Shown here: piece after piece, positions 1 through 29,364 of the stretch
Position numbering within the stretch: position 1 is the stretch's first letter
How the letters are laid out: every line of letters starts with the position of its first letter
Origin: Octopus sinensis
Taxonomy: Eukaryota
Length of the DNA: 64,000 bases
Direction: 5' to 3'
Assembly (NCBI RefSeq): GCF_006345805.1
Contig: NC_043021.1
Coordinates: 20,770,001-20,834,000, forward strand
The notes under the pieces: model-generated
The model's input: the letters and a program-made list of their open reading frames with translations, nothing else
Database searches by the model: none
Told to the model about the DNA's origin: nothing
Program-made: the position numbers and the translations under genes

Positions 1-130
1 TATTTTTTTAATATGCTGGCCATTGATAAAATTTCTTTTCGTAAAAAATTTCATCCTATATTAGATGTATATATATATATATTGTTAGCCACTACACACA
101 TTTTTTTCTCTCCTTGTTTTTTCTGTGTAC

Positions 131-166
131 CTTTCTGTAGAAGAGCGTAGGCTCGAAACGTAAAAG
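131..166 (+). ncRNA. Minimal type I hammerhead-like motif (Penelope-type, core variant); copies near 9347 and 18551 (+) and at 3740-3775 and ~12955-12990 (-)
   Basis: cttt-CUGUAGA-a-GAGC gtag GCTC-GAAAC-GU-A-aaag. Stems I and II pair, stem III is the palindrome ACGU, and the core has U in place of A6. Confidence 0.45.
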
Positions 167-2028
167 ACTTTTTCTATTTAACGGACTCTTCGTTTGCCGA
201 ACGACATGCACGAATGATTTGTTTATTGTTATCAAATGTTCGTGCCGCATATGAGCTCCCCCTCTTCAAATTGACTTTATCTGAACAGGCACACGGTGTG
301 CCACGCGTCAAGTGTTGAAGTGATCGTCGAACATCGCGAGATAAAAGTGATTCAAGGACCAAAATCGAAAATTCGAAATCTGAAGAACTTTCCATTATGA
401 ACTAATTACATAATCTCCGCTCTATTCTTCTGTTGGGTTGCTAACTCGAGTTTCCGTTGTCAACAAATATTCACATTCTCTGTGTAATATTTAATTTCTT
501 TAATAGGGCGAATGACGTCCTGTCCTGATTCCAACGCTATACCAATATCGAGGGGTCGCCAACCGTCCTCCCCGGCTGAAACTTAAAAAAAAAAATGGAG
601 CGGGTACGAAGAGGTTGAATAAAAGTTTGGGCGTAACTTCGGTATAGGTACCGGAAGTACCAGATACATTTCAAGAAGTGTTGTTTTTTTTTATAAATAT
701 GGGATGTTAGGAGAAAAGGGTTTCTGTTATCTCCAGAAATGTAAACAAAGCCACTTCCGGTACCTAAACCGAAGGATCGCCAAAGTTTGAAACTATCTTA
801 ACCATATCTGTTTTTTCTTTTTGTATTTTTGATAGACTGTAAAAAACGGGGAAAAAATGTAACTCAAAAACCCAAAATAATCTTGGGTAAATAAAAATTT
901 GAAAAGAAGAAAAAAAGGTGGCATTCTTTTGTTTTTGTTTTCTTTTCTATCGCAAAGTCTGTTGTGCTAAAAACGGGATTTGATATATATTATATATATA
1001 TATACACACATGTAAGAGCGAAGGTAAAGCGAATGTACACACTTTTTTTTTTTTTTCAAAATTTTTTTTTTTTAATATCTGTTTACGATATTGAAGAATA
1101 CGATTTTGTCCAAAAACCACGCTTTCAAAGTTTAATTTCTTAATTCTTCCACCCCAATTTCTCAATTATTAACTTTGTTTTCGAATTCTTTTTAATCCAT
1201 GTAGAAAAACAGAGATTACGAATCTGGGATTTAAAAAAAAAAAATTTAATCCCCCCTCCCCCACCCATCACCTCCCCGCTTTCAAAAAGCTCAAAATTCC
1301 CTTGATGTTTCACGCATTCAAAAATCTCAGACCATTACCAGAAAACCCGACATGCTAGAAACAGCAGCTAAACGACATTATTTCTGGAAAAACTTCCTCA
1401 CTTTCTAAAAAGTTAAAAGTGAAACATTGGGAGTTTTTAGCCTTTTGAAAGTGGGGAGCTGATGGATATTTGAAGTTGGACAAGGAATTTGAGTGTTTTT
1501 TCAAGAAAATTAAAAAAAAAATTCTCAAAGATTCGTAATCTCTCTATATGTCTACGTGGATTACAAGAAAGAGAAAAAAATCCAGCGATTAACTCCTCGA
1601 TTCTTTTGCGTGGGATCAGGTACCATGACCTCCTAATATGCTGCAAATCCCTTATTTTGGTTCGGAAGAAGAGGGGGACTCCCCGCTTCTCGGAATCATT
1701 GGAATTTTTTTTTTTGTTTCGTTGAATGAATTCCTGTGACCTAATATGCTACAAAACCCTTGTTGGGGTCCGAAAAACGGGGTGGGGTGAGGTGGAAGCC
1801 TCGGATATTTCAACCCCTACCCCCAATTGATCTTTTTACCCGCACGATTTTCACTAAGGAAAAAGAAAATAGTAATAAAAATCGGGCCAAACTAATTAAT
1901 TTTTGCGTGTGTGTGTGTTGAGAAAGATGAACGATTTAAAATAAATATATCTTAATTGTTGTGTGAGAAAGATATATTCTGATGATAAAATATTGTATCT
2001 TTCAAAAGCATCCTAAATTTATAGACTA

Positions 2029-2125
2029 CTAGCAGTATCTCCCGGCGTTGCTCGAGATTGTAGGGAAATAACTATAAAGAATTTTTAGAGAGTTATAGCC
2101 AAAAAATAGCAAAAAATGCATTAAA
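2029..2125 (-). mobile_element. Helitron 3'-end fragment (also at ~11237-11335)
   Basis: ctagcagtatctcccggcgttgctcgag...gcattaaa is the 3' hairpin/CTAG end of the same family. Confidence 0.7.
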
Positions 2126-2777
2126 TTCCCCTTCATCAGCTGCCCTGGTTCGACTCAATGCGTGTTTCGAAGGTAAAGGCAGGTATATATATATACATAT
2201 ATACGACGGGCTTCTTTTAGTTTCCGTCTACCAAATCCACTCACAAGGCTTTGATCAGCCCGAGGCTATAGTAGAAGACACTTGCCCAAGGTGCCACGCC
2301 GTGGACTGAACCCAGAACCATGTGGTTGGTAAGCAAGCTACTTACCACACAGCCATTCCTGATGCAAAAAAAATACACACATGACAACACTCACTCTCTC
2401 TCTCTCTCTCTCTCACCTCCAATTCATATACATCTTTCACTTTCTGCTCTCACTCCAAGGCAAATGCCGCTGTATATATCGTGCACCACAGACACAGGCC
2501 AAGCCATACGGACCAAGTCTAGATACACATACACAGGCTGACAAGTATTTACTTTCATTTTCGGTTGCTGCCGTTCGGTTTTTCCTTCTTACTCACCGCT
2601 TTACATTTACACAATGAATTTCATACACACACACACACACACACTCCCATTGACTTTTATGTCTATGAGTTAATAGTGAAACACACTGTATGTGTGTGTG
2701 TGGGTGTGTGTGAATACAAATATATTAAGTGGAAACACGCCGCACGTGTACCTGCTATCTTCCATGTATACGTACAT

Positions 2778-2980
2778 CAGTGGTTTTCAACCAGGGTTCC
2801 GCCAGTACAGTCCAGGGGTTGCGCAAGAAGTTACAAAAATGCTAAAATCGACAGTAATTTTTAATTCTCCTGTGCAGATATGTGTGCATATAAGACAATT
2901 AAATTGTTGCACAGGGGTTCCTCGAGCCAGTGGAACGTTTCCTTGTGGTTCCGCTCCAGCAAAAAGGTTGAAAAGCACTG
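2778..2980. mobile_element. hAT (Charlie-like) MITE (duplicate at 11990-12192)
   Basis: TIRs CAGTGGTTTTCAACC / GGTTGAAAAGCACTG. Same family as 41857-42075. Confidence 0.75.
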
Positions 2981-4278
2981 CTCTATACATACATAAATAC
3001 ATCGTGCGAGTGTTTCACTATTCATGAAAGTCAATGGGTCCATGTGTGTCTGTCTTTATGACTGTGTTTGTTTCAACCCGACCGCTTGACAACCCATTTT
3101 CTTTACTACCCCCACAAGGGGCTAAACACAGAGGAGACAAAGAAGGACAGGCGGATTAAGTCGATTATATCGACCCAGTGCGTGACCGTACTTACTTAAT
3201 TTATCGCTGGCAGAACCGTTAGCACGCCGGGCAAAATACTTAGCGTAATTTCGTCTGTCTACATGTTTTGAGTTCAAATTCTGCCGAGGTCGACTTTGCC
3301 TTTCATCCTTTCGGGGTCGATAAATTAGTACCAGTTACGCACTGGGGTCGATGTAATCGACTCGATCTTTTGGTCTGTCTTTGTTTGTTCCCTCTATGTT
3401 TAGCCCCTTGTGGGTAAATAAAGAAATAGGTACTTAATTTATCCACATCGAAAAGATGAAAGGGAAAGTCAACCTCGGCATCATCACCTCATTTTACATG
3501 TCTCTGTAAATTTTGGAGTCAATCCGACGGGATCTAGTGGCCTTTAACCCGTTCTCAATGCCAAAACCAGACGGAAAAACAAACAAACAAATCTTTCGCA
3601 TTTCAGTTATATAAATAGAGAAGATATTATATATATATATATTATATAGGGAGAGTTTACGAAAAAAAACAAAAGACGAAGACAGGTGGTGTACAAAACA
3701 AACAGATGTATTAGTATAACGCTCAGGAATAGGAAAAGTATTTTACGTTTCGAGCCTACGCTCTTCTACAGAAAGAGACACAGAAAAAAACAAGGAGAGA
3801 AAAAAATGTGTGTAGTGGCTAACGATCAATCATGGCGGAAACCACAAATTAACCAACACATCGATTGGACCACATTTATCGCTTATTTTTTAAAACAAAG
3901 CACGACATGAGAAAATAGGTGATGTAACATATCTTACGGCTGTTTCTGATCGGATTGCCTAAATGCTGTCTATAAATAAACGCGAGAATAAAGTTCATCT
4001 TCATAGCGAATTCGAATTAAGGCTGTGGTGTGTGCGAGAGATTCGAAATAAAGGAACCTACCTTCTCTTCGATCTGATGGAGACCCTTCAGTGGTAACAG
4101 ATCCTTTGACACAGCCCGACCCGAACGCTAGAGACAGCAGCTGCTTCGCCCAAACTTAGCAACGTGTTCACCCGTTTGTCAGCAAAAGCGGGATTAGGAC
4201 ATACGTTACAGCTCGGAATTGTATGTCTTTCTTCCAGTGACTGAGTTGCTCCATTACTCATGGTCCCCAGGAAATCCC

Positions 4279-6078
4279 TATCTGACACCAGTTGTCCGAT
4301 ATAGGTTATCAGTCCCCTTAGTTCCTCACAATGTACGAAGGCGTGCGTGACAGTTTCACTGACACGCCCGCACCTCGGGCATGTGGGTGGGGTACCAACG
4401 CCATGCCTTGACAACCTCCCTCGAACTGACAAGGCTGATCGGTAGCACAACTAGGCCAAGGATGTCTGGAAGTTGTCCAGATACCTCGGCCCGAATGTCC
4501 TTCCGAACAGGTTGACAAGCTGTTCCTCTTCGAAGCCTACTCTCCCCCAGGATGTCGTCGGACATATGCTCTACCAACCCGTAGTGGTAGCCCCGCTGCC
4601 GGTATTGCTTGTTCGGGAGAACAGAGCGAGTGCATGTCTGCACTCCCTCTTCCATTCGCTCATTTTTGTTCTCCGCGTGATCCATGCGCCCACGTCCCGA
4701 GGGAACGTCAATTGTGGAAGGAAGAACTTGACATGCGGTGACTACACCCGTTCACCATCCAGGTAGAGCCAGTTTTCTCAACCTCAGCGCATCATCAGCC
4801 AAGGCATCCCTAACCCACCCTTTAACGGTTTCTGGCAGCACATGAGGCGCCTCACAAGTGGTGGTTTCCCATTCCACAAAAAGCGGAAAAGGATCCATTC
4901 CAGCTGGTCAGCCACTCTCCAGGGCAAGGCACATCGGTTAGGCAGTTGGTTATAACCGATGCTATAAAACACACCTGTGCAACCTCGACCCTCCCTAGCA
5001 AGGATAGCAACCTCCCAGATCAAGTCTGGGTTATGGCCGTCACCTTGCCTGTGACCTCGCTCCAGTTTTTCTCCATCTGGAGATCTGGTCCAAACCAGAC
5101 TCCAAGCAATTTAACCGGGCCCTCCGTCCAACGTCCCACGAAGCTGTTTGGAGACATCGACTTGCCCCTACGGGTGCCGAGTTGCAAGCCGACTGATACT
5201 TCCTAGTTAATTTTTGCTCCTGCCACCTCTTCGTATCTTTTGATGGCCTCTTCTACACGAGGTAGCTGCCCTTCATCAGACACGATGATGGTGACATCAT
5301 CCGCATATGCCGTCACTCTCCTACCGTAACATAGATCACGCGGATTCCCCGCGTGGCCTCCAATTTCCGCAGCAGTGGCTCAAGTGCCAATACATACAGA
5401 AGCGGAGGCAGGCCTGGCGAATTGAACGTTCGATCACGAACGGCTTCGAGAAGGAACCGTTTACCCGGACGATTGAATCGATGTGCTATCATACATAGCA
5501 TCCATCTACGAACAGTCGAGTCCAGTCCAACCGCCCTGAGGACTGCTCCCAGATACCGATGGTCAACCCTATCGAATGCCTTAGACTGGTCTAAATTCAC
5601 CAGCGCCCTACATTTGCCAGAATTTTACCCACCCGCTCTATAGTGTCGTGTATGAGGTGAAGGTTGTCGTGTATTGTCCTGCCTGGGATGCACATGTCTG
5701 TGCTTCTCCCACCAGGTCGCCCACTACAAGTCTCAATCTCTTGGCTAACAATTGGCCAAAATCTTAACTCTGTGTTTAGCAGAATTATGGGCCTAAAGTT
5801 ATTAATGTCATTCCCCTTGCTCGGGTCCTTCCTGATCAGTGTCACTACTCCCCGGCTCACATATTTAGGGATTCTCCTGTTCTGCTACCAGTTCGCATAT
5901 ACACCGGCCAGTATGTTCCCGAACAAGTTTGGCATACTCTTATAAAATTCGTAAGGAAGACCATCCAGTCCGGGCGACTTGTCCCCGGGGCACTCAGAAA
6001 GCACCTCTATGACCTCCACAAATGTGATCGGCCTTTCATAGCGCTCCGCCTTACATGCCGAGAGACACGGGCCGCCGG
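4279..6078 (-). mobile_element. L1/Tx1-clade LINE ORF2 fragment (RT + C-terminal CCHC zinc knuckle), dead, copy 1
   Basis: Minus-strand translations: KSPGLDGLPYEFY, NFRPIILLNTEL, LDQSKAFDRVDH, YADDVT, GGLGMP, CPRCGRVSETVTHAFVHC. In-frame stops are shared by both copies. Bounded by the direct repeat ccaggaaatccc (4267-4278, 6079-6090). Confidence 0.9.
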
Positions 6079-7350
6079 CCAGGAAATCCCGATTGCATCT
6101 TTTCCAGTGGGTTTCTGGTGCTGGGATCGATAGCTTACGGTCTCGACATCTCCCTGTCAGCCGGTGATGTTGGTCTTGAGCTCTTGGAGAACCTATCGCA
6201 GTTTATAAACTTGTTCTCGTGCGAGTGTGTTCTTCCCTACATTCGTCCCCTGTTCTTTGGTGCCAAACTATTTGCTCTTACCAAGCCCAATGGTGACTTC
6301 CGCCCTATAGCAATTGGTGGTACTCTGCGACAGGTGTGTCTGTCTTCAATTTCTAAATGCCTGTCAGCCAAATTTTCTCCTACCCAGCTACGGGTGGTAC
6401 TAAGCTAGACTATGAGGCTGAAGCCCATGCCACTAGAGCTTTCACTAACTTGCCTTCTGAGTCCCCAAAGGTCATCCTTAAACTAGACTTCAAAAACGCC
6501 TTCAATTCCATCAGTTGGGATGTCATCTTCCGTGTAGTAAGGGAGACTGCTCAAAACCTCTATCACTTTGCTTGGCAAGCTTATCGGGAGCCCTCCAACC
6601 TCGCCTTTGGTGACCACCTCATTCCACCTGTCTTTGAAGTCCAACAGGATGACCCACTTGAACCATATTTATTATTATTGTCTTTTTTTATCATCAAACT
6701 AGCAGTATCGCCCGGCGTTGCTCGGGTTTGTAAGGGAAATAACTATATAAGCATTTTTAGAGAGTTATAACAAAAAAAATGCATTAAAATGGAAAAAATG
6801 ATGGTGAATTTTTTTTTAATCGTTGACTCATCGTAGACATTTTTAGAGAGTTATTTCCCTTATAATTTAGCGAAAAAATGCATTAAAATGGAAAAAATGA
6901 TGGTAAATTTTTTTTTAATCGTAGACTCATCGTAGACGCGCGCTAATACCCAGAAGGGCTCGATATGAATCACGACTATAAGATACCCGGTTTTGGTTAA
7001 ACTGCACCGCAAAATGTGGGAGTAGTTAGGAATATAAATCGTGGGAGACAGACACACAACCTCTCTTTTATATATAAAGATATTGATCTGTCAATGCTGG
7101 ATTAGTGAATACAGGGGTGGGTGGGCAAATGTAGACATACAGTGTTTGACCCTTCAGTATTCAGATTATTCTATCAAATGTAATATTTTCTTTTATTCAT
7201 GTCGTTTTGATGTTATCCTGAAATTAACAGGATGACCCACCCACTTGGACCTTCTCTATTTGCCCTGGCTATTGACGATGTTATCAAGATGGGAGCTGAC
7301 CTAGACTTGAATGTCTGGTATCTTGACAATGCCTGTTTGGGGGCTCCTGC
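6079..7350 (+). mobile_element. CRE/SLACS-like non-LTR RT fragment, degenerate and interrupted (6661-7225 is an insertion; a further piece lies left of 4278), copy 1
   Basis: SGAGIDSLRSRHL, FFGAKLFALTKPNGDFRPIAIGGTLR, LKLDFKNAFNSI and VQQDDPL, then after the insertion GPSLFALAIDD...LNVWYLDNACLG (RT motif YLDD changed to YLDN). Confidence 0.75.
6699..7080 (-). mobile_element. Non-autonomous Helitron, complete
   Basis: Minus strand starts TCTTTATATATAAAAG, ends with GC hairpin cccgagcaacgccggg plus CTAG, and sits between A and T without a TSD. Confidence 0.8.
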
Positions 7351-7890
7351 ATTGATATTTTTTTCTTTCTCCTTTTAGTTTTTGTAAAATACATTCCTTT
7401 TCATTGAATTATTTTAAATGATATCAGTTTATATAAGAAAATCAGAGACGGAAAATGGGATTTCACGAGAGTCTCTTCTCATATACATTTTTACGTATCT
7501 TTTTATAGTTTTTATAAACTTCTTTGAGAGGAAGTGTGTCTTTTCTATCAGTTCCTTAAGGGGACACTAGAATATTGCAACAACTAAGCAAAACGATGAC
7601 TAAAAAACGAGGTACTTATTCAAGAAGTCACCTAAGGGGACAGACACAATCTACACCTGTGATGTAAGACAATTGACTGTACAGTATCTCGCCTGCAAGG
7701 TACAGGGATATATATGTATATATATATGTGTGTATGTATATACATATACTACGTAATATATGTGTATGTATATATATACACACATAGGCACATAAGCATT
7801 ATTTATAGAAACATATTTCTGCATTGTTCTTTCGTCTCTTTTCATGGTACGGCTGCATTAACGAACTCCTATCTCACATGTCTGTTCCGT

Positions 7891-7943
7891 GAAAAGAAAG
7901 GAAAAACCGAAAACTATAAATAGAACGAATTTACTTTCACTTT
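7891..7943. promoter_or_regulatory. Cluster of IRF/ISRE-like GAAANNGAAA-type motifs upstream of the ParB-like ORF (repeated at ~17103-17155)
   Basis: gaaaagaaaggaaaaaccgaaaac at 7891-7914 and actttcacttt (reverse complement AAAGTGAAAGT) at 7933-7943. Motif match only, in AT-rich DNA. Confidence 0.25.
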
Positions 7944-8370
7944 AATTTCCACGAAAAGCATAATCGCGCGCGCACTTCTGTATTTTATACCCTGGCTATT
8001 TCAGATGACGCATTCGCTTCCTATCACCTCAAGTCGTCGCTTGCTAAACGCACTCGCAACTGAAATTATATACATTCACACATCTCAACAAGCCTTCACT
8101 TCTACAATATTATATTTCAATCAATCACTTCGGATACTATGGAATATTAATTAAGACTTCTACACACTACGTTAATCGAATTCTATGCATTAGTATCGGC
8201 AATTTTCCTTGATTACGAACGATCCTTTCGATGTCATTTCTCGACTGAATTTAGAAATCCTGGAAATATACATACTGTGAGTAAACTTTCCTCTCTTGAA
8301 TTATTTTCAATAGCATCTACGGTATTTCTTTCCACCTGGTACGAAGACTATATATACACTCACAAACACA

Positions 8371-8792
8371 ATGAGCCTTAGACTCAGTCCAAGCGACATC
8401 CGCTATACTCAAGATTCAATTGCCTGTAAGTTCCGTAACGGGACAACATTGACAAAAACCATTTCAGATTTAGTCAAAGGTACAATCACGCCTGACAGCA
8501 TTCCTGTAATTTCGGTTTACCTAAAGGATGGGAAATACTACAGCACTGACAATAGGAGGCTATACGTTTTCAAAGAGCTGCAAAGTCGGAGTCAACCAGA
8601 CTTGAAGATAAGGGTTTACGTTACTCGGCGGCACTATCACAATCGAAGTTCACGACGCTTAACGATGGCCAAAGTATAACAGTCCGAAGTGGATCAATAG
8701 CCTGGTTAAGCATGGATTTTGATGGCTTATACATGGATTTTGATGACTCAAGCACGGATTCTGATGACTTCTTTCTTCTTGTAGAATTATGA
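8371..8792 (+). CDS. Intronless ParB/sulfiredoxin-fold-like small protein, copy 1 (one 1-bp deletion near 8626 relative to copy 2)
   Basis: ATG in cacaATGA context. MSLRLSPSDIRYTQDSIACKFRNG...IPVISVYLKDGKYYSTDNRRLYVFKEL matches the IR(Y/F)(S/T)QxSI ... DNRRL(W/Y)VF pattern I recognise from uncharacterised ParB-like proteins. Restoring the G present in copy 2 extends the frame through SKFTTLNDGQSITVR to an acidic tail (~140 aa). Confidence 0.7.
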
Positions 8793-11700
8793 ATTTAAAA
8801 AAAATATTCCATTGCTAAAAGAAAGAAAAACCAACAAAATCCAAAAAGCACGTTGCCGAATTTTACTGTTCCGAAACAATCTATAAACTTCAAATTTACC
8901 CTCATGTCACCGACAGCATCTCTTCATTTAGAGAAGTGTCAAAAATCCAAAGTCTCTTGTATTTTATTTCAATAACCAACTCGCAAACCAAGTTATAATA
9001 ATTGCCATTATGCAAGGAACAAAACAAAACAAAACAAAAAACAATCTTTGCACGGAAAAAGTTAATTTGGGCGGTGTTTGGTTTCCGTAAGTAGTTTTAG
9101 TAAATCTTTACTCCCTACTTTTAAAAACTGTAAATCTAAAAATGGCCGAAAGCGAAAACGTTGCCGAACGAGTGTGGGACAAAAATAAATAAATTAAATA
9201 AAAATTTAACCTTTGAAGGTTTTTTTTAATATGCTGGCCATTGATAAAATTTCTTTTCGTAAAAAATTTCATCCTATATTAGATGTATATATATATATTG
9301 TTAGCCACTACACACATTTTTTTCTCTCCTTGTTTTTTCTGTGTACCTTTCTGTAGAAGAGCGTAGGCTCGAAACGTAAAAGACATTTTCTATTTAACGG
9401 ACTCTTCGTTTGCCGAACGACATGCACGAATGATTTGTTTATTGTTATCAAATGTTCGTGCCGCACATGAGCTCCCCCTCTTCAAATTGACTTTATCTGA
9501 ACAGGCACACGGTGTGCCACGCATCAAGTGTTGAAGTGATCGTCGAACATCGCGAGATAAAAGTGATTCAAGGACCAAAATCGAAAATTCGAAATCTGAA
9601 GAACTTTCCATTATGAACTAATTACATAATCTCTGCTCTATTCTTCTGTCGGGTTGCTAACTCGAGTTTCCGTTGTCAACAAATATTCACATTCTCTGTG
9701 TAATATTTAATTTCTTTAATAGGGCGAATGACGTCCTGTCCTGATTCCAACGCTATACCAATATCGAGGGGTCGCCAACCGTCCTCCCCGGCTGAAACTT
9801 TAAAAAAAAAAATGGAGCGGGTACGGAGAGGTTGAATAAAAGTTTGGGCGTAACTTCGGTATAGGTACCGGAAGTACCAGATACATTTCAAGAAAGTGTT
9901 CTTTTTTTTTATAAATATGGGATGTTAGGGTTAGGAGAAAAGGGTTTCTGTTATCTTCAGAAATGTAAACAAAGCCACTTCCGGTACCTATACCGAAGGA
10001 TCGCCAAAGTTTGAAACTATCTTAACCATATCTGTTTTTTCTTTTTGTATTTTTGATAGACTGTAAAAAACGGGGAAAAAATGTAACTCAAAAACCCAAA
10101 ATAATCTTGGGTAAATAAAAATTTGAAAAGAAGAAAAAAAGGTGGCATTCTTTTGTTTTTGTTTTCTTTTCTATCGCAAAGTCTGTTGTGCTAAAAACGG
10201 GATTTGAATATATATATATATATATATACACACATGTAGAGCGAAGGTAAGCGAATGTACACACTTTTTTTTTTTTTCAAAATTTTTTTTTTTTAATATC
10301 TGTTTACGATATTGAAGAATACGATTTTGTCCAAAAACCACGCTTTCAAAGTTTTAATTTCTTTCACCCCAATTTCTCAATTATTAACTTTGTTTTCGAA
10401 TTCTTTTTAATCCATGTAGAAAAACAGAGATTACGAATCTGGGATTTAAAAAAAAAATTTAATCCCCCCTCCCCCACCCATCACCTCCCGCTTTCAAAAA
10501 GCTCAAAATTCCCTTGATGTTTCACGCATTCAAAAATCTCAGACCATTACCAGAAAACCCGACATGCTAGAAACAGCAGCTAAACGACATTATTTCTGGA
10601 AAAACTTCCTCACTTTCTAAAAATTAAAAGTGAAACATTGGGAGTTTTTAGCCTTTTGAAAGTGGGGAGCTGATGGATATTGAAGTTGGACAAGGAATTT
10701 GAGTGTTTTTTTCAAGAAAATTAAAAAAAAAATTCTCAAAGATTCGTAATCTCTCTATATGTCTACGTGGATTACAAGAAAGAGAAAAAAATCCAGCGAT
10801 TAACTCCTCGATTCTTTTGCGTGGGATCAGGTACCATGACCTCCTAATGCTGCAAATCCCTTATTTTGGTTCGGAAGAAGAGGGGACTCCCCGCTTCTCG
10901 GAATCATTGGAATTTTTTTTTTTGTTTCGTTGAATGAATTCCTGTGACCTAATATGCTACAAAACCCTTGTTGGGGTCCGAAAAACGGGGTGGGGTGAGG
11001 TGGAAGCCTCGGATATTTCAACCCCTACCCCCAATTGATCTTTTTACCCGCACGATTTTCACTAAGGAAAAAGAAAATAGTAATAAAAATCGGGCCCAAA
11101 CTAATTTTTGCGTGTGTGTGTGTTGAGAAAGATGAACGATTTAAAATAAATATATCTTAATTGTTGTGTGAGAAAGTATATATATTCTGATGATAAAATA
11201 TTGTATCTTTCAAAAGCATCCTAAATTTATAGACTACTAGCAGTATCTCCCGGCGTTGCTCGAGATTGTAAGGGAAATAACTATAAAGAATTTTTAGAGA
11301 GTTATAGCCAAAAAATAGCAAAAAATGCATTAAATTCCCCTTCATCAGCTGCCCCTGGTTCGACTCAATGCGTGTTTCGAAGGTAAAGGCAGGTATATAT
11401 ATATACATATATACGACGGGCTTCTTTTAGTTTCCGTCTACCAAATCCACTCACAAGGCTTTGATCAGCCCGAGGCTATAGTAGAAGACACTTGCCCAAG
11501 GTGCCACGCCGTGGGACTGAACCCAGAACCATGTGGTTGGTAAGCAAGCTACTTACCACACAGCCATTCCTGATGCAAAAAAAAATACACACATGACAAC
11601 ACTCACTCTCTCTCTCTCTCTCTCTCACCTCCAATTCATATACATCTTTCACTTTCTGCTCTCACTCCAAGGCAAATGCCGCTGTATATATCGTGCACAC

Positions 11701-13494
11701 AGACACAGGCCAAGCCATACGGACCAAGTCTAGATACACATACACAGGCTGACAAGTATTTACTTTCATTTTCGGTTGCTGCCGTTCGGTTTTTCCTTCT
11801 TACTCACCGCTTTACATTTACACAATGAATTTCATACACACACACACACACACACTCCCATTGACTTTTATGTCTATGAGTTGAATAGTGAAACACACTG
11901 TATGTGTGTGTGTGTGTGTGTGTGAATACAAATATATTAAGTGGAACACGCTCGCACGTGTACCTGCTATCTTCCATGTATACGTACATCAGTGGTTTTC
12001 AACCAGGGTTCCGCCAGTACAGTCCAGGGGTTGCGCAAGAAGTTACAAAAATGCTAAAATCGACAGTAATTTTTAATTCTCCTGTGCAGATATGTGTGCA
12101 TATAAGACAATTAAATTGTTGCACAGGGGTTCCTCGAGCCAGTGGAACGTTTCCTTGTGGTTCCGCTCCAGCAAAAAGGTTGAAAAGCACTGCTCTATAC
12201 ATACATAAATACATCGTGCGAGTGTTTCACTATTCATGAAAGTCAATGGGTCCATGTGTGTCTGTCTTTATGACTGTGTTTGTTTCAACCCGACCGCTTG
12301 ACAACCCATTTTCTTTACTACCCCCACAAGGGAGGCTAAACACAGAGGAGACAAAGAAGGACAGGCGGATTAAGTCGATTATATCGACCCAGTGCGTGAC
12401 CGGTACTTAATTTATCGCTGGCAGAACCGTTAGCACGCCGGGCAAAATACTTAGCGTAATTTCGTCTGTCTACATGTTTTGAGTTCAAATTCTGCCGAGG
12501 TCGACTTTGCCTTTCATCCTTTCGGGGTCGATAATTAAGTACCAGTTACGCACTGGGGTCGATGTAATCGACTCGATCTGTTGGTCTGTCTTTGTTTGTT
12601 CCCTCTATGTTTAGCCCCTTGTGGGTAAATAAAGAAATAGGTACTTAATTTATCCACATCGAAAAGATGAAAGGGAAAGTCAACCTCGGCATCATCACCT
12701 CATTTTACATGTCTCTGTAAATTTTGGAGTCAATCCGACGGGATCTAGTGGCCTTTAACCCGTTCTCAATGCCAAAACCAGACGGAAAAACAAACAAACA
12801 AATCTTTCGCATTTCAGTTATATAAATAGAGAAGATATTTATATATATATATATATATATAGGGAGAGTTTACGAAAAAAAACAAAAGACGAAGACAGGT
12901 GGTGTACAAAACAAACAGATGTATTAGTATAACGCTCAGGAATAGGAAAAGTATTTTACGTTTCGAGCCTACGCTCTTCTACAGAAAGAGACACAGAAAA
13001 AAACAAGGAGAGAAAAAAATGTGTGTAGTGGCTAACGATCAATCATGGCGGAAACCACAAATTAACCAACACATCGATTGGACCACATTTATCGCTTATT
13101 TTTTAAAACAAAGCACGACATGAGAAAATAGGTGAATATCTTAACGTATCTTACGCTGTTTCTGATCGGATTGCCTAAATGCTGTCTATAAATAAACGCG
13201 AGAATAAAGTTCATCTTCATAGCGAATTCGAATTAAGGCTGTGGTGTGTGCGAGAGATTCGAAATAAAGGAACCTACCTTCTCTTCGATCTGATGGAGAC
13301 CCTTCAGTGGTAACAGATCCTTTGACACAGCCCGACCCGAACGCTAGAGACAGCAGCTGCTTCGCCCAAACTTAGCAACGTGTTCACCCGTTTGTCAGCA
13401 AAAGCGGGATTAGGACATACGTTACAGCTCGGAATTGTATGTCTTTCTTCCAGTGACTGAGTTGCTCCATTACTCATGGTCCCCAGGAAATCCC

Positions 13495-15295
13495 TATCTG
13501 ACACCAGTTGTCCGATATAGGTTATCAGTCCCCTTAGTTCCTCACAATGTACGAAGGCGTGCGTGACAGTTTCACTGACACGCCCGCACCTCGGGCATGT
13601 GGGTGGGGTACCACCGCCATGCCTTGACAACCTCCCTCGAACTGACAAGGCTGATCGGTAGCACAACTAGGCCAAGGATGTCTGGAAGTTGTCCAGATAC
13701 CTCGGCCCGAATGTCCTTCCGAACAGGTTGACAAGCTGTTCCTCTTCGAAGCCTACTCTCCCCCAGGATGTCGTCGGACATATGCTCTACCAACCCGTAG
13801 TGGTAGCCCCGCTGCCGGTATTGCTTGTTCGGGAGAACAGAGCGAGTGCATGTCTGCACTCCCTCTTCCATTCGCTCATTTTTGTTCTCCGCGTGATCCA
13901 TGCGCCCACGTCCCGAGGGAACGTCAATTGTGGAAGGAAGAACTTGACATGCGGTGACTACACCCGTTCACCATCCAGTAGAGCCAGTTTTCTCAACCTC
14001 AGCATCATCAGCCAAGGCATCCCTAACCCACCCTTTAACGGTTTCTGGCAGCACATGAGGCGCCTCACAAGTGGTGGTTTCCCATTCCACAAAAAGCGGA
14101 AAAGGATCCATTCCAGCTTGGTCAGCCACTCTCCAGGGCAAGGCACATCGGTTAGGCAGTTGGTTATAACCGATGCTATAAACACCTGTGCAACCTCGAC
14201 CCTCCCTAGCAAGGATAGCAACCTCCCAGATCAAGTCTGGGTTATGGCCGTCACCTTGCCTGTGACCTCGCTCCAGTTTTTCTCCATCTGGAGATCTGGT
14301 CCAAACCAGACTCCAAGCAATTTAACCGGGCCCTCCGTCCAACGTCCCACGAAGCTGTTTGGAGACATCGACTTGCCCCTACGGGTGCCGAGTTGCAAGC
14401 CGACTGATACTTCCTAGTTAATTTTTGCTCCTGCCACCTCTTCGTATCTTTTGATGGCCTCTTCTACACGAGGTAGCTGCCCTTCATCAGACACGATGAT
14501 GGTGACATCATCCGCATATGCCGTCACTCTCCTACCGTAACATAGATCACGCGGATCTCCCCGCGTGGCCTCCAATTTCCGCAGCAGTGGCTCAAGTGCC
14601 AATACATACAGAAGCGGAGGCAGGCCTGGCGAATTGAACGTTCGATCACGAACGGCTTCGAGAAGGAACCGTTTACCCGGACGATTGAATCGATGTCGCT
14701 ATACATAGCATTGAACCATCTACGAACAGTCGAGTCCAGTCCAACCGCCCTGAGGACTGCTCCCAGATACCGATGGTCAACCCTATCGAATGCCTTAGAC
14801 TGGTCTAAATTCACCAGCGCCCTACATTTGCCAGAAATTTTACCCACCCGCTCTATAGTGTCGTGTATGAGGTGAAGGTTGTCGTGTATTGTCCTGCCTG
14901 GGATGGCACATGTCTGTGCTTCTCCCACCAGGTCGCCCACTACAAGTCTCAATCTCTTGGCTAACAATTGGCCAAAATCTTTAACTCTGTGTTTAGCAGA
15001 ATTATGGGCCTAAAGTTATTAATGTCATTCCCCTTGCTCGGGTCCTTCCTGATCAGTGTCACTACTCCCCGGCTCACATATTTAGGGATTCTCCTGTTCT
15101 GCTACCAGTTCGCATATACACCGGCCAGTATGTTCCCGAACAAGTTTGGCATACTCTTATAAAATTCGTAAGGAAGACCATCCAGTCCGGGCGACTTGTC
15201 CCCGGGGCACTCAGAAAGCACCTCTATGACCTCCACAAATGTGATCGGCCTTTCATAGCGCTCCGCCTTACATGCCGAGAGACACGGGCCGCCGG
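13495..15295 (-). mobile_element. L1/Tx1-clade LINE ORF2 fragment, copy 2
   Basis: Tandem-unit duplicate of 4279-6078. ORFs 14524..14967, 14414..14602 and 13958..14221 carry the RT motifs. Confidence 0.9.
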
Positions 15296-16563
15296 CCAGG
15301 AAATCCCGATTGCATCTTTTCCAGTGGGTTTCTGGTGCTGGGATCGATAGCTTACGGTCTCGACATCTCCCTGTCAGCCGGTGATGTTGGTCTTGAGCTC
15401 TTGGAGAACCTATCGCAGTTTATAAACTTGTTCTCGTGCGAGTGTGTTCTTCCCTACATTCGTCCCCTGTTCTTTGGTGCCAACTATTTGCTCTTACCAA
15501 GCCCAATGGTGACTTCCGCCCTATAGCAATTGGTGGTACTCTGCGACAGTGTGTCTGTCTTCAATTTCTAAATGCCTGTCAGCCAAATTTTCTCCTACCC
15601 AGCTACGGGTGGGTACTAAGCTAGACTATGAGGCTGAAGCCCATGCCACTAGAGCTTTCACTAACTTGCCTTCTGAGTCCCCAAAGGTCATCCTTAAACT
15701 AGACTTCAAAAACGCCTTCAATTCCATCAGTTGGGATGTCATCTTCCGTGTAGTAAGGGAGACTGCTCAAAACCTCTATCACTTTGCTTGGCAAGCTTAT
15801 CGGGAGCCCTCCAACCTCGCCTTTGTGACCACCTCATTCCACCTGTCTTGAAGTCCAACAGGATGACCCACTTGAACCATATTTATTATTATTGTCTTTT
15901 TTTATCATCAAACTAGCAGTATCGCCCGGCGTTGCTCGGGTTGTAAGGGAAATAACTATATAAGCATTTTTAGAGAGTTATAACAAAAAAAATGCATTAA
16001 AAATGGAAAAAATGATGGTGAATTTTTTTTTAATCGTTGACTCATCGTAGACATTTTTAGAGAGTTATTTCCCTTATATATTAGCGAAAAAATGCATTAA
16101 AATGGAAAAAATGATGGTAAATTTTTTTTTAATCGTAGACTCATCGTAGACGCGCGCTAATACCCAGAAGGGCTCGATATGAATCACGACTATAAGATAC
16201 CCGGTTTTGGTTAAACTGCACCGCAAAATGTGGGAGTAGTTAGGAATATAAATCGTGGGAGACAGACACACAACCTCTCTTTTATATATAAAGATATTGA
16301 TCTGTCAATGCTGGATTAGTGAATACAGGGGTGGGTGGGCAAATGTAGACATACAGTTGTTTGACCCTTCAGTATTCAGATTATTCTATCAAATGTAATA
16401 TTTTCTTTTATTCATGTCGTTTTGATGTTATCCTGAAATTAACAGGATGACCCACCCACTTGGACCTTCTCTATTTGCCCTGGCTATTGACGATGTTATC
16501 AAGATGGGAGCTGACCTAGACTTGAATGTCTGGTATCTTGACAATGCCTGTTTGGGGGCTCCT
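15296..16563 (+). mobile_element. CRE/SLACS-like RT fragment, copy 2
   Basis: Duplicate of 6079-7350 (ORFs 15272..15526 and 15549..15851; continuation at 16441-16563). Confidence 0.75.
15913..16294 (-). mobile_element. Non-autonomous Helitron, complete (unit copy 2)
   Basis: Duplicate of 6699-7080. Confidence 0.8.
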
Positions 16564-17581
16564 GCATTGATATTTTTTTCTTTCTCCTTTTAGTTTTTGT
16601 AATACATTCCTTTTCATTGAATTATTTTAAATGATATCAGTTTATATAAGAAAATCAGAGACGGAAAATGGGATTTCACGAGAGTCTCTTCTCATATACA
16701 TTTTTACGTATCTTTTTATAGTTTTTATAAACTTCTTTGAGAGGAAGTGTGTCTTTTCTATCAGTTCCTTAAGGGGACACTAGAATATTGCAACAACTAA
16801 GCAAAACGATGACTAAAAAACGAGGTACTTATTCAAGAAGTCACCTAAGGGGACAGACACACATCTACACCTGTGATGTAAGACAATTGACTGTACAGTA
16901 TCTCGCCTGCAAGGTACAGGGATATATATGTATAATATATGTGTGTATGTATATACATATACTACGTAATATATGTGTATGTATATATATACACACATAG
17001 GCACATAAGCATTATTTATAGAAACATATTTCTGCATTGTTCTTTCGTCTCTTTTCATGGTACGGCTGCATTAACGAACTCCTATCTCACATGTCTGTTC
17101 CGTGAAAAGAAAGGAAAAACCGAAAACTATAAATAGAACGAATTTACTTTCACTTTAATTTCCACGAAAAGCATAATCGCGCGCGCACTTCTGTATTTAT
17201 TACCCTGGCTATTTCAGATGACGCATTCGCTTCCTACACCTCAAGTCGTCGCTTGCTAAACGCACTCGCAACTGAATTATTACATTCACACATCTCAACA
17301 AGCCTTCACTTCTACAATATTATATTTCAATCAATCACTTCGGATACTATGGAATATTAATTAAGACTTCTACACACTACGTTAATCGAATTCTATGCAT
17401 TAAGTATCGGCAATTTTCCTTGATTACGAACGATCCTTTCGATGTCATTTCTCGACTGAATTTAGAAATCCTGGAAATATACATACTGTGAGTAAACTTT
17501 CCTCTCTTGAATTATTTTCAATAGCATCTACGGTATTTCTTTCCACCTGGTACGAAGACTATATATACACTCACAAACACA

Positions 17582-17989
17582 ATGAGCCTTAGACTCAGTC
17601 CAAGCGACATCCGCTATACTCAATTCAATTGCCTGTAAGTTCCGTAACGGGACAACATTGACAAAAACCATTTCAGATTTAGTCAAAGGTACAATCACGC
17701 CTGACAGCATTCCTGTAATTTCGGTTTACCTAAAGGATGGGAATACTACAGCACTGACAATAGGAGGCTATACGTTTTCAAAGAGCTGCAAAGTCGGAGT
17801 CAACCAGACTTGAAGATAAGGGTTTACGTTACGTCGGCGGCACTATCACAATCGAAGTTCACGACGCTTAACGATGGCCAAAGTATAACAGTCCGAAGTG
17901 GATCAATAGCCTGGTTAAGCATGGATTTTGATGGCTTATACATGGATTTTGATGACTCAAGCACGGATTCTGATGACTTCTTCTTGTAG
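17582..17989 (+). CDS. ParB/sulfiredoxin-fold-like small protein, copy 2 (2-bp and 1-bp deletions relative to copy 1)
   Basis: Near-identical to 8371-8792. It lacks 2 nt at ~17620 and an a at ~17742 but is intact where copy 1 is broken. The consensus of the two copies is an open 136-aa frame ending DSSTDSDDFFL*. Confidence 0.65.
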
Positions 17990-27490: not shown

Positions 27491-28539
27491 TCATAATATA
27501 AAGAAGAATAAGAACAACAACAATGACAATAATAATAATAACAATAATATATTAAGAATTTCAAAGAAAATCATGTGGTTCAATTAGCTTTGTTTTGCTT
27601 TTCTCTGTAGGGAGCACATGTAGAGAGGGGGAGGGACTACATGTGATGAAAGTTATCAAAATGTGAGTGTATGTGTATATGTGTGTATGTGTATGTATAT
27701 ATGTGTGTGTATATATACATACGTGGAGGCGCAATGGCCTAGTGGTTAGGGCAGCAGACTCGCGGTCGTAGGATCGCGGTTTCGATTCCCAGACCGAGCG
27801 TTGTGAGTGTTTATTGAGCGAAAACACCTAAAGCTCCACGAGGCTCCTGTGGGGGATGGAGGCGATCCCTGCTGTACTCTTTCGCCACAACTTTCTCTCA
27901 CTCTTTCTACTGTTGGCCTGCTCGCTTAGCCAGTGGGGTGGCATCATTTGAAGGCTAAAACAATGCGAAGTGCATTGTGACCAGCGATGTGTAACAACAT
28001 TTGATAGCCTGGTAGGTCACGGTGATCATGGTGATATATACATACACACACACACACATACGTTCATATATAAATGAGGAGGTGCTGAAAAGAGTTCCTG
28101 GTTTTAAGGGTATTGCGAAGGCCTGGGTTGGAGGCCTAACTTTCTGAGTTCATTTGCAGGGCCTAAAAAAAAACCTGAAGAAATGCTGCGATAAGTGTGT
28201 GAACCTGAGAAAGGAATATTTCGAATAAAATCATAATTAACTGATCCGCCTCTACTTTCTTTTATCCAACACCAGGAACTTTTCAGGAACTCCCGCGTAT
28301 GTATTTACATATAGCTGTGTGTGTGTGTGTGTATATATATATATCATCATCATCATCATCATCATCATCATCGTTTAGCGTCCGTTTTCCATGCTAGCAT
28401 GGGTTGGACGGGTCAACTGGGGTCTGTGAAGCTGGAAGGCTTCGTCAGGCCCAGTCAGATCTGGCAGTGTTTCTACGGCTGGATGCCCTTTCTAACGCCA
28501 ACCACTCCGCGAGTGTAGTGGGTGTTTTTTACGTGCCAC

Positions 28540-29310: not shown

Positions 29311-29364
29311 CAGATGGGTCACTTAACCCCTGCTTTCTGATATATGATTTGATTTTGATTGTTC

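What the first reader, a model, noticed from the sequence alone, without database searches (positions are those of the whole stretch)
8371..8792. Tandemly amplified intronless gene for a small ParB/sulfiredoxin-fold protein
Seen: the only non-TE coding sequence in the 9.2-kb unit, present twice (8371, 17582). Each copy has different small indels and their consensus is an open 136-140 aa frame. Knowledge: IRYTQDSI ... STDNRRL sits where the ParB/Srx family has its nucleotide-binding GxxR-type motif. From memory it resembles uncharacterised ParB-like proteins of invertebrates and ParB-like C-terminal domains of bacterial RHS toxins. It lacks the sulfiredoxin FGGCHR cysteine motif. Inference: a copy-number-amplified standalone nucleotide-acting effector, possibly immune or conflict related, carried in a mobile cassette. 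This is my best candidate for an undescribed system here.
Basis: partly seen in the sequence, partly recalled or inferred. Interest (0 to 1): 0.8.

Follow-up and report, generated by a model that had tools for sequence, protein, structure and literature searches.

The report
Octopus copies of a bacterial toxin domain
The two small reading frames are real copies of an octopus gene family whose ~105-residue domain is the same one that many bacteria carry as the killing tip of RHS-type toxins; it has the ParB/sulfiredoxin nucleotide-binding fold, was predicted in silico in 2012 (Tox-ParBL1), has never been tested at the bench, and evolves fast in octopus.

Summary
ORFs at 8371-8792 and 17582-17997 are copies D and E of a five-copy tandem array of about 41.5 kb on an Octopus sinensis chromosome. 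Both window copies are frame-broken, but sister copies A and C just upstream are intact (129 and 136 aa). The D and E units differ by 70 indels against 23 substitutions, and the breaks recur at the same sequence contexts, so assembly error is the likelier cause.

The domain has no Pfam or NCBIfam model. An AlphaFold model (pLDDT 90) hits only ParB/Noc/sulfiredoxin/serine-kinase folds. About 1,900 cluster representatives match it. In bacteria it is the C-terminal tip of RHS and PT-HINT polymorphic toxins, and a DUF7660-like gene follows in 58 of 69 loci. In molluscs and tunicates it is the N-terminal domain of small uncharacterised proteins. Q14, S16, D60-N-R-R-L64 and the KFTT.NDG block are conserved in both groups. 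This matches Tox-ParBL1 of Zhang et al. 2012, which already listed metazoan members.

Octopus has at least 15 loci. Young paralogues change amino acids 2.5-20 times faster than their flanks change bases.

Verdict: a new member of a known but untested family. The fold and toxin-tip reading is supported. "Mobile cassette" and "undescribed" are not.

The parts
8371..8624 (+). Copy D, first frame piece: residues 1-84 and the first two bases of codon 85 of the ParBL1-like domain. It includes Q14-D15-S16 (8410-8418) and D60-N61-R62-R63-L64 (8548-8562).
   Evidence: Translation; alignment to intact copies A and C; motif conservation.
8625..8792 (+). Copy D, second frame piece: the rest of the domain (KFTTLNDGQSITVR) and the acidic/aromatic tail MDFD...DSDDFF (about 8712-8789), with the stop at 8790-8792. 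The frame differs from the first piece because copy D is one base shorter than copies A, C and E at 8624/8625.
17582..17997 (+). Copy E of the same gene. It has two frame breaks (17622/3 and the A-run at 17742/3). The tail and stop match intact copy A.
1..9216 (+). Tandem unit holding copy D. It is the fourth of five units in an array that starts upstream of the window at about C25:20,747,860.
   Evidence: the repeat finder; blastn of the unit against 60 kb of the locus.
9221..18422 (+). Tandem unit holding copy E. It is 98.7% identical to the previous unit, with 23 mismatches against 70 gap openings.
18426..19386 (+). Truncated start of a further unit, marking the end of the array.
4088..4450 (-). 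Reverse-transcriptase zinc-binding fragment (zf-RVT). This is TE debris inside the unit, repeated at 13304-13666.
   Evidence: PF13966, E = 1.2e-6.
14524..15009 (-). RVT_1 reverse-transcriptase fragment in the second unit. A weaker RVT_1 piece lies on the + strand at 6357-6770.
   Evidence: PF00078, E = 1.6e-9 and 2.9e-3.

Best explanation
The two ORFs are copies D and E of a five-copy tandem array of a single-coding-exon octopus gene. The protein is a basic domain of about 105 residues followed by a short acidic tail that ends in aromatic residues.

The domain belongs to the family that Zhang et al. (2012) called Tox-ParBL1, a divergent branch of the ParB/sulfiredoxin nucleotide-binding fold. 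In bacteria it is the C-terminal warhead of RHS, HINT and haemagglutinin-type polymorphic toxins, and an adjacent immunity-type gene accompanies it. Animals, at least molluscs and tunicates, hold a separate clade of standalone cytosolic versions. These have no signal peptide, and their C-terminus is either an acidic tail or a CaaX prenylation box.

Inferred mechanism: the protein binds a nucleoside triphosphate. The phosphates sit on the invariant N-R-R at the N-terminus of helix 2, the position of ParB GERR, ToxB GNHR and Srx GCHR. The Q14/S16 loop is on the other side, at the position of the ParB Box I region. The protein then hydrolyses the nucleotide or transfers from it onto a target. Because the whole toxin motif set is kept in the octopus proteins, they most likely keep the toxin's chemistry.

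Its use in the animal is inferred to be intracellular defence or conflict. The frame breaks in the two window copies are most likely long-read consensus errors.

Shown: the anatomy, the family, the fold and the bacterial context. Inferred: NTP chemistry, biological role, and the artefact status of the frameshifts.
For: Anatomy.

Array of five copies, with A and C intact.

Indel-dominated differences between units (70 gap openings against 23 mismatches), and lesions in copies B and E at the same two sequence contexts although they belong to different subtypes.

Orthologue or annotated gene in O. sinensis and O. bimaculoides, and named homologues in Argonauta, Ciona, Clavelina, many bivalves and a chiton.

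Bacterial toxin context:
- PT-HINT plus the domain.
- RHS repeats, RHS core and the domain.
- RHS plus PT-HINT.
- 69 loci across many phyla.
- A DUF7660-like ORF abutting the domain's end in 58 of 69 loci.

Fold: AF2 pLDDT 90.2. Foldseek against the PDB gives Noc, ParB-CDP/CTPgS, Atu1540, sulfiredoxin, SbnI and serine kinase as the 21 best hits. The named hits among the 50 best BFVD matches listed are ParB/Srx proteins. The hhalign register puts DNRR on GERR.

Conservation in both 35 animal and 71 bacterial rows: Q14, D60, N61, R62, R63, L64 and G100 at >= 90%; S16, K93, F94, T96 and R106 at >= 80%.

Animal rows separate from bacterial rows on a single branch, SH-aLRT 99.

Precedent that a ParB-fold toxin tip is an NTPase whose P-motif arginine is essential: ToxB preprint 10.64898/2026.05.05.722872.

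Fast amino-acid change in young paralogues.

The domain is basic and the tail acidic, and this recurs in oysters and others.
Against: No sequence profile links the domain to ParB at significance here. Pfam PF02195 gives no hit, hmmsearch against the PDB finds nothing, and hhalign against 17 ParB_N sequences gives only E = 0.058.

Foldseek E-values are modest (3e-3 at best) and TM-scores are 0.43-0.50.

The P-motif glycine is replaced by Asp.

No Tox-ParBL1 protein has been assayed, so NTP binding is by analogy only. Zhang et al. favoured a nuclease activity.

The downstream partners I found (DUF7660, or unnamed ~125-132-aa proteins in Bacillota) are not the Imm-SUKH or Imm44 families listed for Tox-ParBL1. 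I also did not compare with the type protein, so identity with that named family is inferred from its published description.

No expression data were available. Both window copies are broken as assembled.

Accelerated dN could partly reflect gene-conversion or compensated-frameshift patches.
Confidence: 0.7

Rival explanations
1. The array is a decaying set of pseudogenes. The frameshifts in copies B, D and E are real, and the near-neutral or faster amino-acid change reflects loss of constraint, so nothing functional is encoded in the window.
For: Three of five copies are frame-broken as assembled. dN is at least as high as dS among array copies. TE debris fills the units.
Against: The copies differ almost only by indels: 0 substitutions against 4 indels in the ORF region, and 23 against 70 over the unit. 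That is the reverse of real decay. Copies B and E carry lesions at the same two contexts although they belong to different subtypes. Copies A and C are intact, the O. bimaculoides orthologue is intact, and every motif residue is kept.
Confidence: 0.15
2. The fold and family are the same, but the chemistry is a nuclease (DNase or RNase) and not NTP binding, hydrolysis or transfer. This is what Zhang et al. proposed for ParB-type toxin tips.
For: Most polymorphic-toxin tips are nucleases, and the 2012 paper argues that ParB-type tips could hydrolyse phosphodiesters. The domain is basic, with a median net charge of +5.5.
Against: Every structurally characterised relative hit by Foldseek uses this site for a nucleotide: CTP in ParB and Noc, ATP in Srx, SerK and SbnI. 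The one ParB-fold toxin tested, ToxB, is an ATPase with no DNA damage. No acidic metal-binding triad typical of nucleases is conserved.
Confidence: 0.2
3. The ORF is cargo or a fragment of a transposable element, a 'mobile cassette', and was amplified by transposition.
For: It sits in a repeat unit with RT fragments on both strands. The domain lies in a single exon at every locus.
Against: There are only about 15 loci in a 2.7-Gb genome, and the paralogues are 41-54% identical in protein, so they are not TE-like copies. No TE domain lies in or is fused to the ORF. Homologues in other animals are ordinary annotated genes. The array has constant head-to-tail spacing, as expected from unequal crossing-over.
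Confidence: 0.05
4. It is bacterial contamination or a very recent bacterial insertion in the assembly.
For: There is 45% identity to a metagenomic PT-HINT toxin tip.
Against: The gene is embedded in a 28.9-Mb scaffold among octopus LINE debris and satellites at 35-40% GC. Orthologues or paralogues occur in O. bimaculoides and Argonauta. Animal sequences form their own side of a long, well-supported branch.
Confidence: 0.02

Closest known systems
Tox-ParBL1 domain of polymorphic toxin systems (Zhang, de Souza, Anantharaman, Iyer, Aravind 2012; PMC3482391)
   Same: Both have a predicted ParB-like alpha+beta fold, a conserved N-terminal Ser and an [NT][RT][RT] motif (here S16 and N61-R62-R63). 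Both occur at the C-terminus of RHS, HINT and filamentous-haemagglutinin toxins. Both have standalone eukaryotic versions, including metazoan ones.
   Different: The family exists only as an in-silico description, with no Pfam or NCBIfam model and no assay. The immunity partners I found (DUF7660-like in 58 of 69 loci) are not the Imm-SUKH or Imm44 families listed in 2012. The animal features seen here were not described: acidic/aromatic tail or CaaX end, tandem arrays, and fast amino-acid change. I made no direct comparison with the type protein (NGK_2271).
ToxB, the ParB-fold ATPase tip of CdiA toxins (bioRxiv 10.64898/2026.05.05.722872)
   Same: Both are monomeric ParB-fold domains of about 100 aa used as a toxin warhead, with a P-motif of the form xN.R (ToxB G-N-H-R, here D-N-R-R). 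Both lack an HTH or dimerisation domain, and in both a small protein encoded directly downstream is present, shown to neutralise ToxB and presumed to do so here.
   Different: ToxB is detectable with PF02195 and belongs to the classical Tox-ParB branch, whereas this family is not detectable that way. ToxB is rare (52 species) and bacterial only. Its ATPase activity is measured, whereas here nothing is measured.
Sulfiredoxin (Srx)
   Same: Both are small standalone eukaryotic ParB-fold proteins. Srx structures are among the fold hits (6ky4, 1xw3).
   Different: Srx has the FGGCHR catalytic cysteine and repairs peroxiredoxin. This protein has DNRR and no cysteine at that position, and it forms a separate family with bacterial toxin relatives.
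Canonical ParB/Noc CTPase N-terminal domain (PF02195)
   Same: The order of strands and helices is the same. The arginine pair sits at the start of the helix that follows the beta-hairpin, and the Gln-containing N-terminal loop sits where Box I lies.
   Different: There is no PF02195 hit, no HTH DNA-binding domain, no dimerisation domain and no ParA-binding motif. There is an extra conserved C-terminal KFTT.NDG.S..VR element.

Membership tests
Tox-ParBL1 (Zhang et al. 2012) | Predicted ParB-like alpha+beta fold | tested here: met
   AF2 pLDDT 90.2. The best 21 PDB hits are ParB/Srx superfamily, and so are the named hits among the 50 best BFVD matches listed.
Tox-ParBL1 (Zhang et al. 2012) | Conserved N-terminal Ser/Thr and an [NT][RT][RT] motif, mostly N-R-R | tested here: met
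   S16 is present in 28 of 35 animal and 57 of 71 bacterial rows. N61-R62-R63 is invariant or nearly so in both sets.
Tox-ParBL1 (Zhang et al. 2012) | C-terminal module of polymorphic toxins with RHS, FilH or HINT upstream | tested here: met
   This holds for the bacterial homologues: PT-HINT, RHS_repeat plus RHS core, RHS plus PT-HINT, and one protein that a source names 'filamentous hemagglutinin'. The octopus protein itself is standalone, as the paper describes for eukaryotes.
Tox-ParBL1 (Zhang et al. 2012) | Immunity genes of the Imm-SUKH or Imm44 families downstream | tested here: inconclusive
   A tightly abutting downstream gene is the rule, but it is DUF7660-like (PF24693) in 58 of 69 loci, and in Bacillota it is an unnamed ~125-132-aa protein with no Pfam hit.
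Tox-ParBL1 (Zhang et al. 2012) | Sequence relationship to the type protein (Neisseria gonorrhoeae NGK_2271) | not tested
The paper's alignment file is not held as text.
ParB_N / ParB-CTPase fold (PF02195) | Significant match to the PF02195 profile | tested here: not met
   No Pfam hit at E <= 10 for four octopus proteins or their pieces. hhalign against 17 ParB_N sequences gives E = 0.058.
ParB_N / ParB-CTPase fold (PF02195) | GxxR phosphate-binding motif at the helix N-terminus after the beta-hairpin | tested here: inconclusive
   D-N-R-R occupies that position in the model's secondary structure (E47-52, E55-58, H61-73) and in the hhalign register. The final Arg is kept but the Gly is Asp. 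I could not superpose coordinates.
ParB_N / ParB-CTPase fold (PF02195) | Nucleotide binding and hydrolysis | not testable with these tools
   This needs purified protein.
Canonical ParB (TIGR00180-type) | HTH DNA-binding domain, C-terminal dimerisation domain and ParA-binding motif | tested here: not met
   The protein is 129-136 aa. After the ~105-aa domain there is only an acidic tail with low model confidence.
Sulfiredoxin | FGGCHR motif with the catalytic cysteine | tested here: not met
   The equivalent position reads S-T-D-N-R-R-L, and no Cys is conserved in the family.
Transposable-element protein | TE-type domains, high copy number and element termini | tested here: not met
   There is no TE domain in the ORF. 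DNA and protein searches of the 2.7-Gb genome find about 15 loci. The RT fragments in the unit are separate, degenerate ORFs.

The most novel reading that the evidence does not exclude
Molluscs and tunicates have domesticated a bacterial polymorphic-toxin warhead (ParBL1, ParB/Srx fold) as an intracellular, nucleotide-dependent immune or conflict effector. Without a separate immunity protein, the basic toxin domain would be restrained in cis by an acidic, aromatic-ended tail, or be parked on membranes by a CaaX prenyl anchor. Tandem arrays such as this one would diversify under arms-race selection.
Probability: 0.2. Interest if true: 0.8.

Novelty: new member of a known kind. Interest (0 to 1): 0.5.

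Why it matters
The ParB fold has recently been recognised as a general NTP-binding module (CTP, ATP, GTP), and in 2026 as an ATPase toxin (ToxB). The large 2025 survey used PF02195 at its gathering threshold and concluded that eukaryotes mainly have sulfiredoxin. That search cannot see this family, which gives no PF02195 hit at all.

The octopus array shows a second ParB-fold lineage in animals. It derives from, or is shared with, bacterial toxin tips. It keeps the full toxin motif set, has expanded to at least 15 loci, and changes amino acids much faster than its flanks change bases.

That makes two things directly testable. The first is what a Tox-ParBL1 domain does chemically, which nobody has assayed. 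The second is how an animal cell lives with, and perhaps uses, an unneutralised toxin domain.

For the genome scan itself, the finding is an ordinary member of a family already described in silico, not a new kind of system.

Tried and rejected
- Pfam scans of the frame pieces, four intact octopus paralogues and three database homologues found no domain hit for this family.
- NCBIfam found nothing.
- phmmer and profile hmmsearch against PDB sequences gave only chance hits such as levansucrase.
- hhalign of the family profile against 17 ParB_N sequences taken from genomes that carry the toxin gave the right register but was not significant, E = 0.058.
- The first try of the search for related loci with the 53-row alignment failed because no conserved stretch was found. 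It worked with a 7-row bacterial alignment.
- I looked for a homologue of the bacterial DUF7660 partner in the octopus genome and found none. The tool warns that this negative is weak.
- I looked for PF02195 in the octopus genome and found no match. Whether the exon-by-exon six-frame search can detect the octopus sulfiredoxin gene was not checked.
- The look-up of encoding contigs for the NCBI model P0003 found nothing on record.
- The supplement of the 2012 paper does not hold the alignment as text.
- Literature searches for DUF7660, Tox-ParB and 'ParB-like toxin' returned only the 2012 paper.
- I considered a 5'-UTR intron (GTGAGT at 8277, AG at 8312-8313) and rejected it. It would be 37 nt, too short for a metazoan intron, so the match is probably chance.
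- I considered the TATATATAC at 8350-8358 as a TATA box and rejected it, because it lies too close to the ATG to serve a transcript that includes this start codon.
- I considered that the acidic tail is an FFAT-like or ribosomal-stalk-like docking motif. I did not test this and do not claim it.
Full report
**1. What is in the sequence**

The window is G000:C25:20,770,001-20,834,000 of a 2.7-Gb genome. A source names the best protein match as Octopus sinensis LOC118767871, on a contig of the same length as C25.

At 8371 an ATG opens the frame MSLRLSPSDIRYTQDSIACKFRNG...KDGKYYSTDNRRLYVFKELQSRSQPDLKIRVYVT. At 8624/8625 the copy is one base shorter than its sisters. The reading continues in another frame (..KFTTLNDGQSITVRSGSIAWLSMDFDGLYMDFDDSSTDSDDFFLLVEL) to the stop at 8790-8792.

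The second copy, at 17582-17997, differs from the first by four indels and not a single substitution over about 530 aligned bases. Two of its indels break the frame (17622/3 and the A-run at 17742/3).

The genome holds intact sister copies, and I used those for every search and for the fold.

**2. The array**

A DNA search of the whole genome finds five copies on C25, at 20,752,983 (A), 20,759,617 (B), 20,769,171 (C), 20,778,371 (D, window 8371) and 20,787,582 (E, window 17582). It also finds two distant paralogues.

- Copies A and C are open from ATG to stop, at 129 and 136 aa.
- blastn of one unit against 60 kb shows head-to-tail units from about 20,747,860 to window position 19,386, about 41.5 kb in all. 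Older units are 94-97% identical and units D and E are 98.7% identical.
- Between D and E there are 23 mismatches but 70 gap openings covering 100 gap bases.
- Copy B is C-subtype and copy E is A/D-subtype, yet their lesions lie at the same two sequence contexts, CTCAAGATT and GGGAAATACTAC.

Indels outnumbering substitutions three to one, and recurring at the same contexts, are what uncorrected long-read consensus produces. Independent decay would not look like this. I therefore regard the frame breaks as probable assembly artefacts. This is an inference and needs accurate reads.

The remaining long ORFs of the unit are zf-RVT and RVT_1 fragments on both strands.

**3. The family**

No Pfam-A or NCBIfam model matches the octopus proteins, their pieces, or the bacterial domain.

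An exhaustive phmmer search of 1.84 billion cluster representatives gives 1,904 proteins at E <= 1e-3 and 340 at E <= 1e-10. They fall into two architectures.

- **(a) Domain at the extreme C-terminus of long proteins.** These carry RHS repeats, the RHS core, PT-HINT or PT-TG, and one is named 'filamentous hemagglutinin' by its source.
- **(b) Domain at the extreme N-terminus of short proteins or proteins with low-complexity extensions.** All named members are animal: Octopus, Argonauta, Ciona, Clavelina, oysters, mussels, scallop, clams, unionids and a chiton. All are annotated 'uncharacterized'.

A scan of one genome per bacterial and archaeal species returned 69 loci. They span Actinomycetota, Bacillota, Pseudomonadota, Bacteroidota, Planctomycetota, Verrucomicrobiota, Acidobacteriota and others.

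In 58 of the 69 loci an ORF similar to DUF7660 (PF24693; E = 9e-30 and 2e-26 for two examples) overlaps or abuts the end of the domain. Bacillota loci carry a different gene of ~125-132 aa there. This is the classic toxin-immunity layout.

**4. The fold**

I predicted the structure of intact copy A with AlphaFold2 and a 53-sequence alignment. Mean pLDDT is 90.2, and 92-98 over residues 1-100. The tail scores 55-66.

The order of elements is b(2-5), b(16-18), a(27-36), b(47-52), b(55-58), a(61-73), b(80-85), b(104-106). The first seven follow the order of the ParB N-terminal domain. The invariant N61-R62-R63 sits at the start of the helix that follows the hairpin, which is where ParB has GERR.

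Foldseek results:
- Against the PDB, the 21 best hits are Noc, ParB with CDP or CTPgS, the ParB-like Atu1540, plant and human sulfiredoxin, SbnI, free serine kinase and Pfu-392566. Probabilities run from 0.63 to 1.0 (0.87 or more for all but four of the 21), E is 3e-3 at best, and TM (query-normalised) is 0.38-0.46 over about 90 columns.
- Against BFVD, the named hits among the 50 best matches listed are again ParB/sulfiredoxin proteins, with best E = 8e-4.

The sequence-profile evidence is weak. hmmsearch of the family profile against PDB sequences finds nothing. hhalign against 17 ParB_N sequences gives only E = 0.058, although it pairs D-N-R-R with G-E-R-R.

I conclude that the ParB/Srx fold is supported by structure prediction and motif position. 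Sequence statistics in my hands do not support it on their own. Zhang et al. report HHpred probability 93% to Thermus ParB for their family.

**5. Which known family**

Zhang et al. 2012 (PMC3482391) define Tox-ParBL1 as follows:
- a predicted ParB fold;
- a conserved N-terminal Ser and an [NT][RT][RT] motif, mostly N-R-R;
- a position at the end of RHS, FilH and HINT toxins;
- 'independent acquisition by eukaryotes', including metazoans.

All of these features are met here. Two points are not settled. The immunity families they list (Imm-SUKH, Imm44) are not the ones I see. I also did not compare with the type protein. I file the octopus gene under Tox-ParBL1 with about 0.8 confidence.

Within the searchable library, no later paper mentions the family. 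The 2025 survey of the ParB-CTPase fold searched with PF02195 at its gathering threshold. That search cannot detect this family.

**6. Conservation and likely chemistry**

Across 35 animal and 71 bacterial domain sequences, Q14, D60, N61, R62, R63, L64 and G100 are conserved at >= 90% in both sets, and S16, K93, F94, T96 and R106 at >= 80%. The animal proteins therefore keep the complete motif set of the toxins.

The one ParB-fold toxin that has been studied is ToxB, from the classical PF02195-detectable branch. It binds ATP on G-N-H-R. It loses binding and toxicity when the Arg is mutated, hydrolyses about 300 ATP per hour, and is blocked by its immunity protein. It acts by a still unknown route that is not ATP depletion or DNA damage.

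By analogy I propose that the octopus protein binds an NTP on N-R-R, with the Q14/S16 loop opposite, and hydrolyses it or transfers from it. This step is inferred. A nuclease activity, as suggested in 2012, remains a live rival.

**7. The animal side**

The octopus genome has at least 15 loci:
- the 5-copy array;
- four on C5 (117.44-118.00 Mb);
- one at C25:11.08 Mb;
- two on C7;
- two on C26;
- one on C27.

In every case the domain matches in one uninterrupted piece.

In a maximum-likelihood tree, the 35 animal rows and the 71 bacterial rows fall on the two sides of one branch (SH-aLRT 99). The octopus paralogues fall into at least five old lineages, one shared with Argonauta and one nested among bivalves. 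This is compatible with one old acquisition or shared ancestry. Non-animal eukaryotes were not sampled.

There is no signal peptide, because the domain starts at residue 4.

C-termini recur in two forms:
- **Acidic tails that end in aromatic residues.** Examples are octopus ...DSDDFFL and oysters ...DEDESDEDYFF and ...DFDDFWY. Of 83 proteins with tails of 8-60 aa, 28 have net charge <= -3 and 8 have net charge >= +3. These tails sit on a basic domain with median charge +5.5.
- **CaaX ends.** These include CVIL, CTIL and CIIL. 22 of 244 proteins have Cys at the fourth-last position, most of them ending in such a box, among them octopus C5 paralogues, Mytilus and Sinanodonta.

I found no DUF7660 homologue in the octopus genome (weak negative).

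**8. Rate of change**

NG86 counts on the domain codons of three young paralogue pairs:

| Pair | dN | dS |
|---|---|---|
| A/C | 0.035 | 0.007 |
| C5b/C5c | 0.057 | 0.015 |
| C26a/C26b | 0.148 | 0.067 |

Pooled, these give 55 nonsynonymous and 6 synonymous differences, a synonymous deficit against neutral site proportions with binomial P = 0.0098. An older pair (C5a/C5b) has dN/dS of 0.43.

Per-site nonsynonymous difference exceeds the mismatch rate of the flanking non-coding DNA in all three young pairs:

| Pair | Ratio to flank | Fisher P (one-sided) |
|---|---|---|
| A/C | 2.5-fold | 0.034 |
| C5b/C5c | 20-fold | 2e-8 |
| C26a/C26b | 5-fold | 6e-10 |

The motif residues never change.

Caveats:
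- Changes cluster at C5 residues 86-93 and array residues 107-112. Gene conversion or compensated frameshifts could have produced these patches.
- The counts are small for the array pair.
- The assembly is error-prone.

With those caveats, the pattern fits diversifying selection on a conserved catalytic core. That is the usual signature of conflict genes.

**9. Verdict**

- 'Mobile cassette' is not supported.
- The system is not undescribed. It is an animal member of the in-silico family Tox-ParBL1, which has never been characterised experimentally and has no curated profile.
- New here are the octopus array, the size and age of the octopus family, the recurrent acidic or prenylated C-termini, the fast amino-acid change, and the DUF7660 partner on the bacterial side.
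- Interest is moderate. The finding is not a new kind of system, but it is a clean, testable entry into an unassayed branch of a fold that is currently of high interest.

Noticed in passing
L027-L095 (bacterial loci), e.g. L057:4307-4558, L039:4309-4563: In 58 of 69 bacterial loci a DUF7660-like ORF (PF24693) of about 85 aa overlaps or abuts the stop of the ParBL1-type toxin tip. DUF7660 is a 'family of unknown function', and this layout suggests it is the cognate immunity protein. Bacillota loci instead carry an unrelated ~125-132-aa gene with no Pfam hit.
   Followed up: partly
G000:C5:117,441,549; 117,986,070; 117,989,598; 118,002,303 (L013-L016); proteins P0009, P0010, P0013: The octopus paralogues on C5 extend beyond the domain exon into proline/threonine-rich tandem repeats and end in CCVIL, a geranylgeranyl-type CaaX box. 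22 of 244 collected family members have Cys at the fourth-last position, most ending in CaaX-like boxes such as CVIL, CTIL or CIIL, including Mytilus and Sinanodonta proteins.
   Followed up: partly
window 8712-8789 and 17920-17994; tails of P0185, P0164, P0192, P0011, P0159: Acidic tails that end in aromatic residues (DSDDFFL, DEDYFF, DFDDFWY, ...) recur after the basic domain in octopus, oysters and unnamed relatives. The MDFDD repeat number differs between array copies. The function is unknown; cis-inhibition or a docking motif are guesses.
   Followed up: partly
window 1-18422, and C25:20,759,617 (copy B): The units differ by 70 gap openings against 23 mismatches, and two copies of different subtype carry lesions at the same two sequence contexts. 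This flags systematic indel errors in this assembly region, so other ORFs nearby may be falsely broken.
   Followed up: partly
window 32709-37797: A 173-bp satellite with 29 copies at 97% identity. It has very strong strand asymmetry (GC skew about +0.5, AT skew about +0.35).
   Followed up: no
window 38619-39854: A tandem repeat with a 138-bp period (also scored at 275 and 413 bp), 9 copies, 97% identity.
   Followed up: no
window 28527-29317, 45223-45533, 46002-46466, 46748-47330: A GC-rich minisatellite of about 61-63 bp (TTTTACGTGCCACCGGCACGG...GGCCACGAACGGATGGTGC) recurs at several places. It is probably the internal repeat of a dispersed element.
   Followed up: no
L117 (ENA ERZ25067590 ctg30305, 1.33 Mb, GC 38%): 1670-2104 and 10001-10381: An unidentified eukaryote-like contig from a metagenome assembly carries two family members 8.3 kb apart. 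Several unnamed proteins share contig lengths of 0.3-1.4 Mb, so local duplication of this gene seems common outside octopus.
   Followed up: partly
whole genome G000: The six-frame search with PF02195 (ParB_N) found nothing in the octopus genome, so it did not pick up a sulfiredoxin gene either. Whether an exon-split gene is detectable this way was not checked.
   Followed up: no
protein P0003 (NCBI LOC118767871): The annotated 151-aa model is identical to array copy C over the domain (the two rows are identical in the tree), but it has a tail (..DSDDFFWKDDGLYMDFDDSSTDSDDFFL) that no single genomic copy encodes. It may join pieces of two array copies.
   Followed up: no
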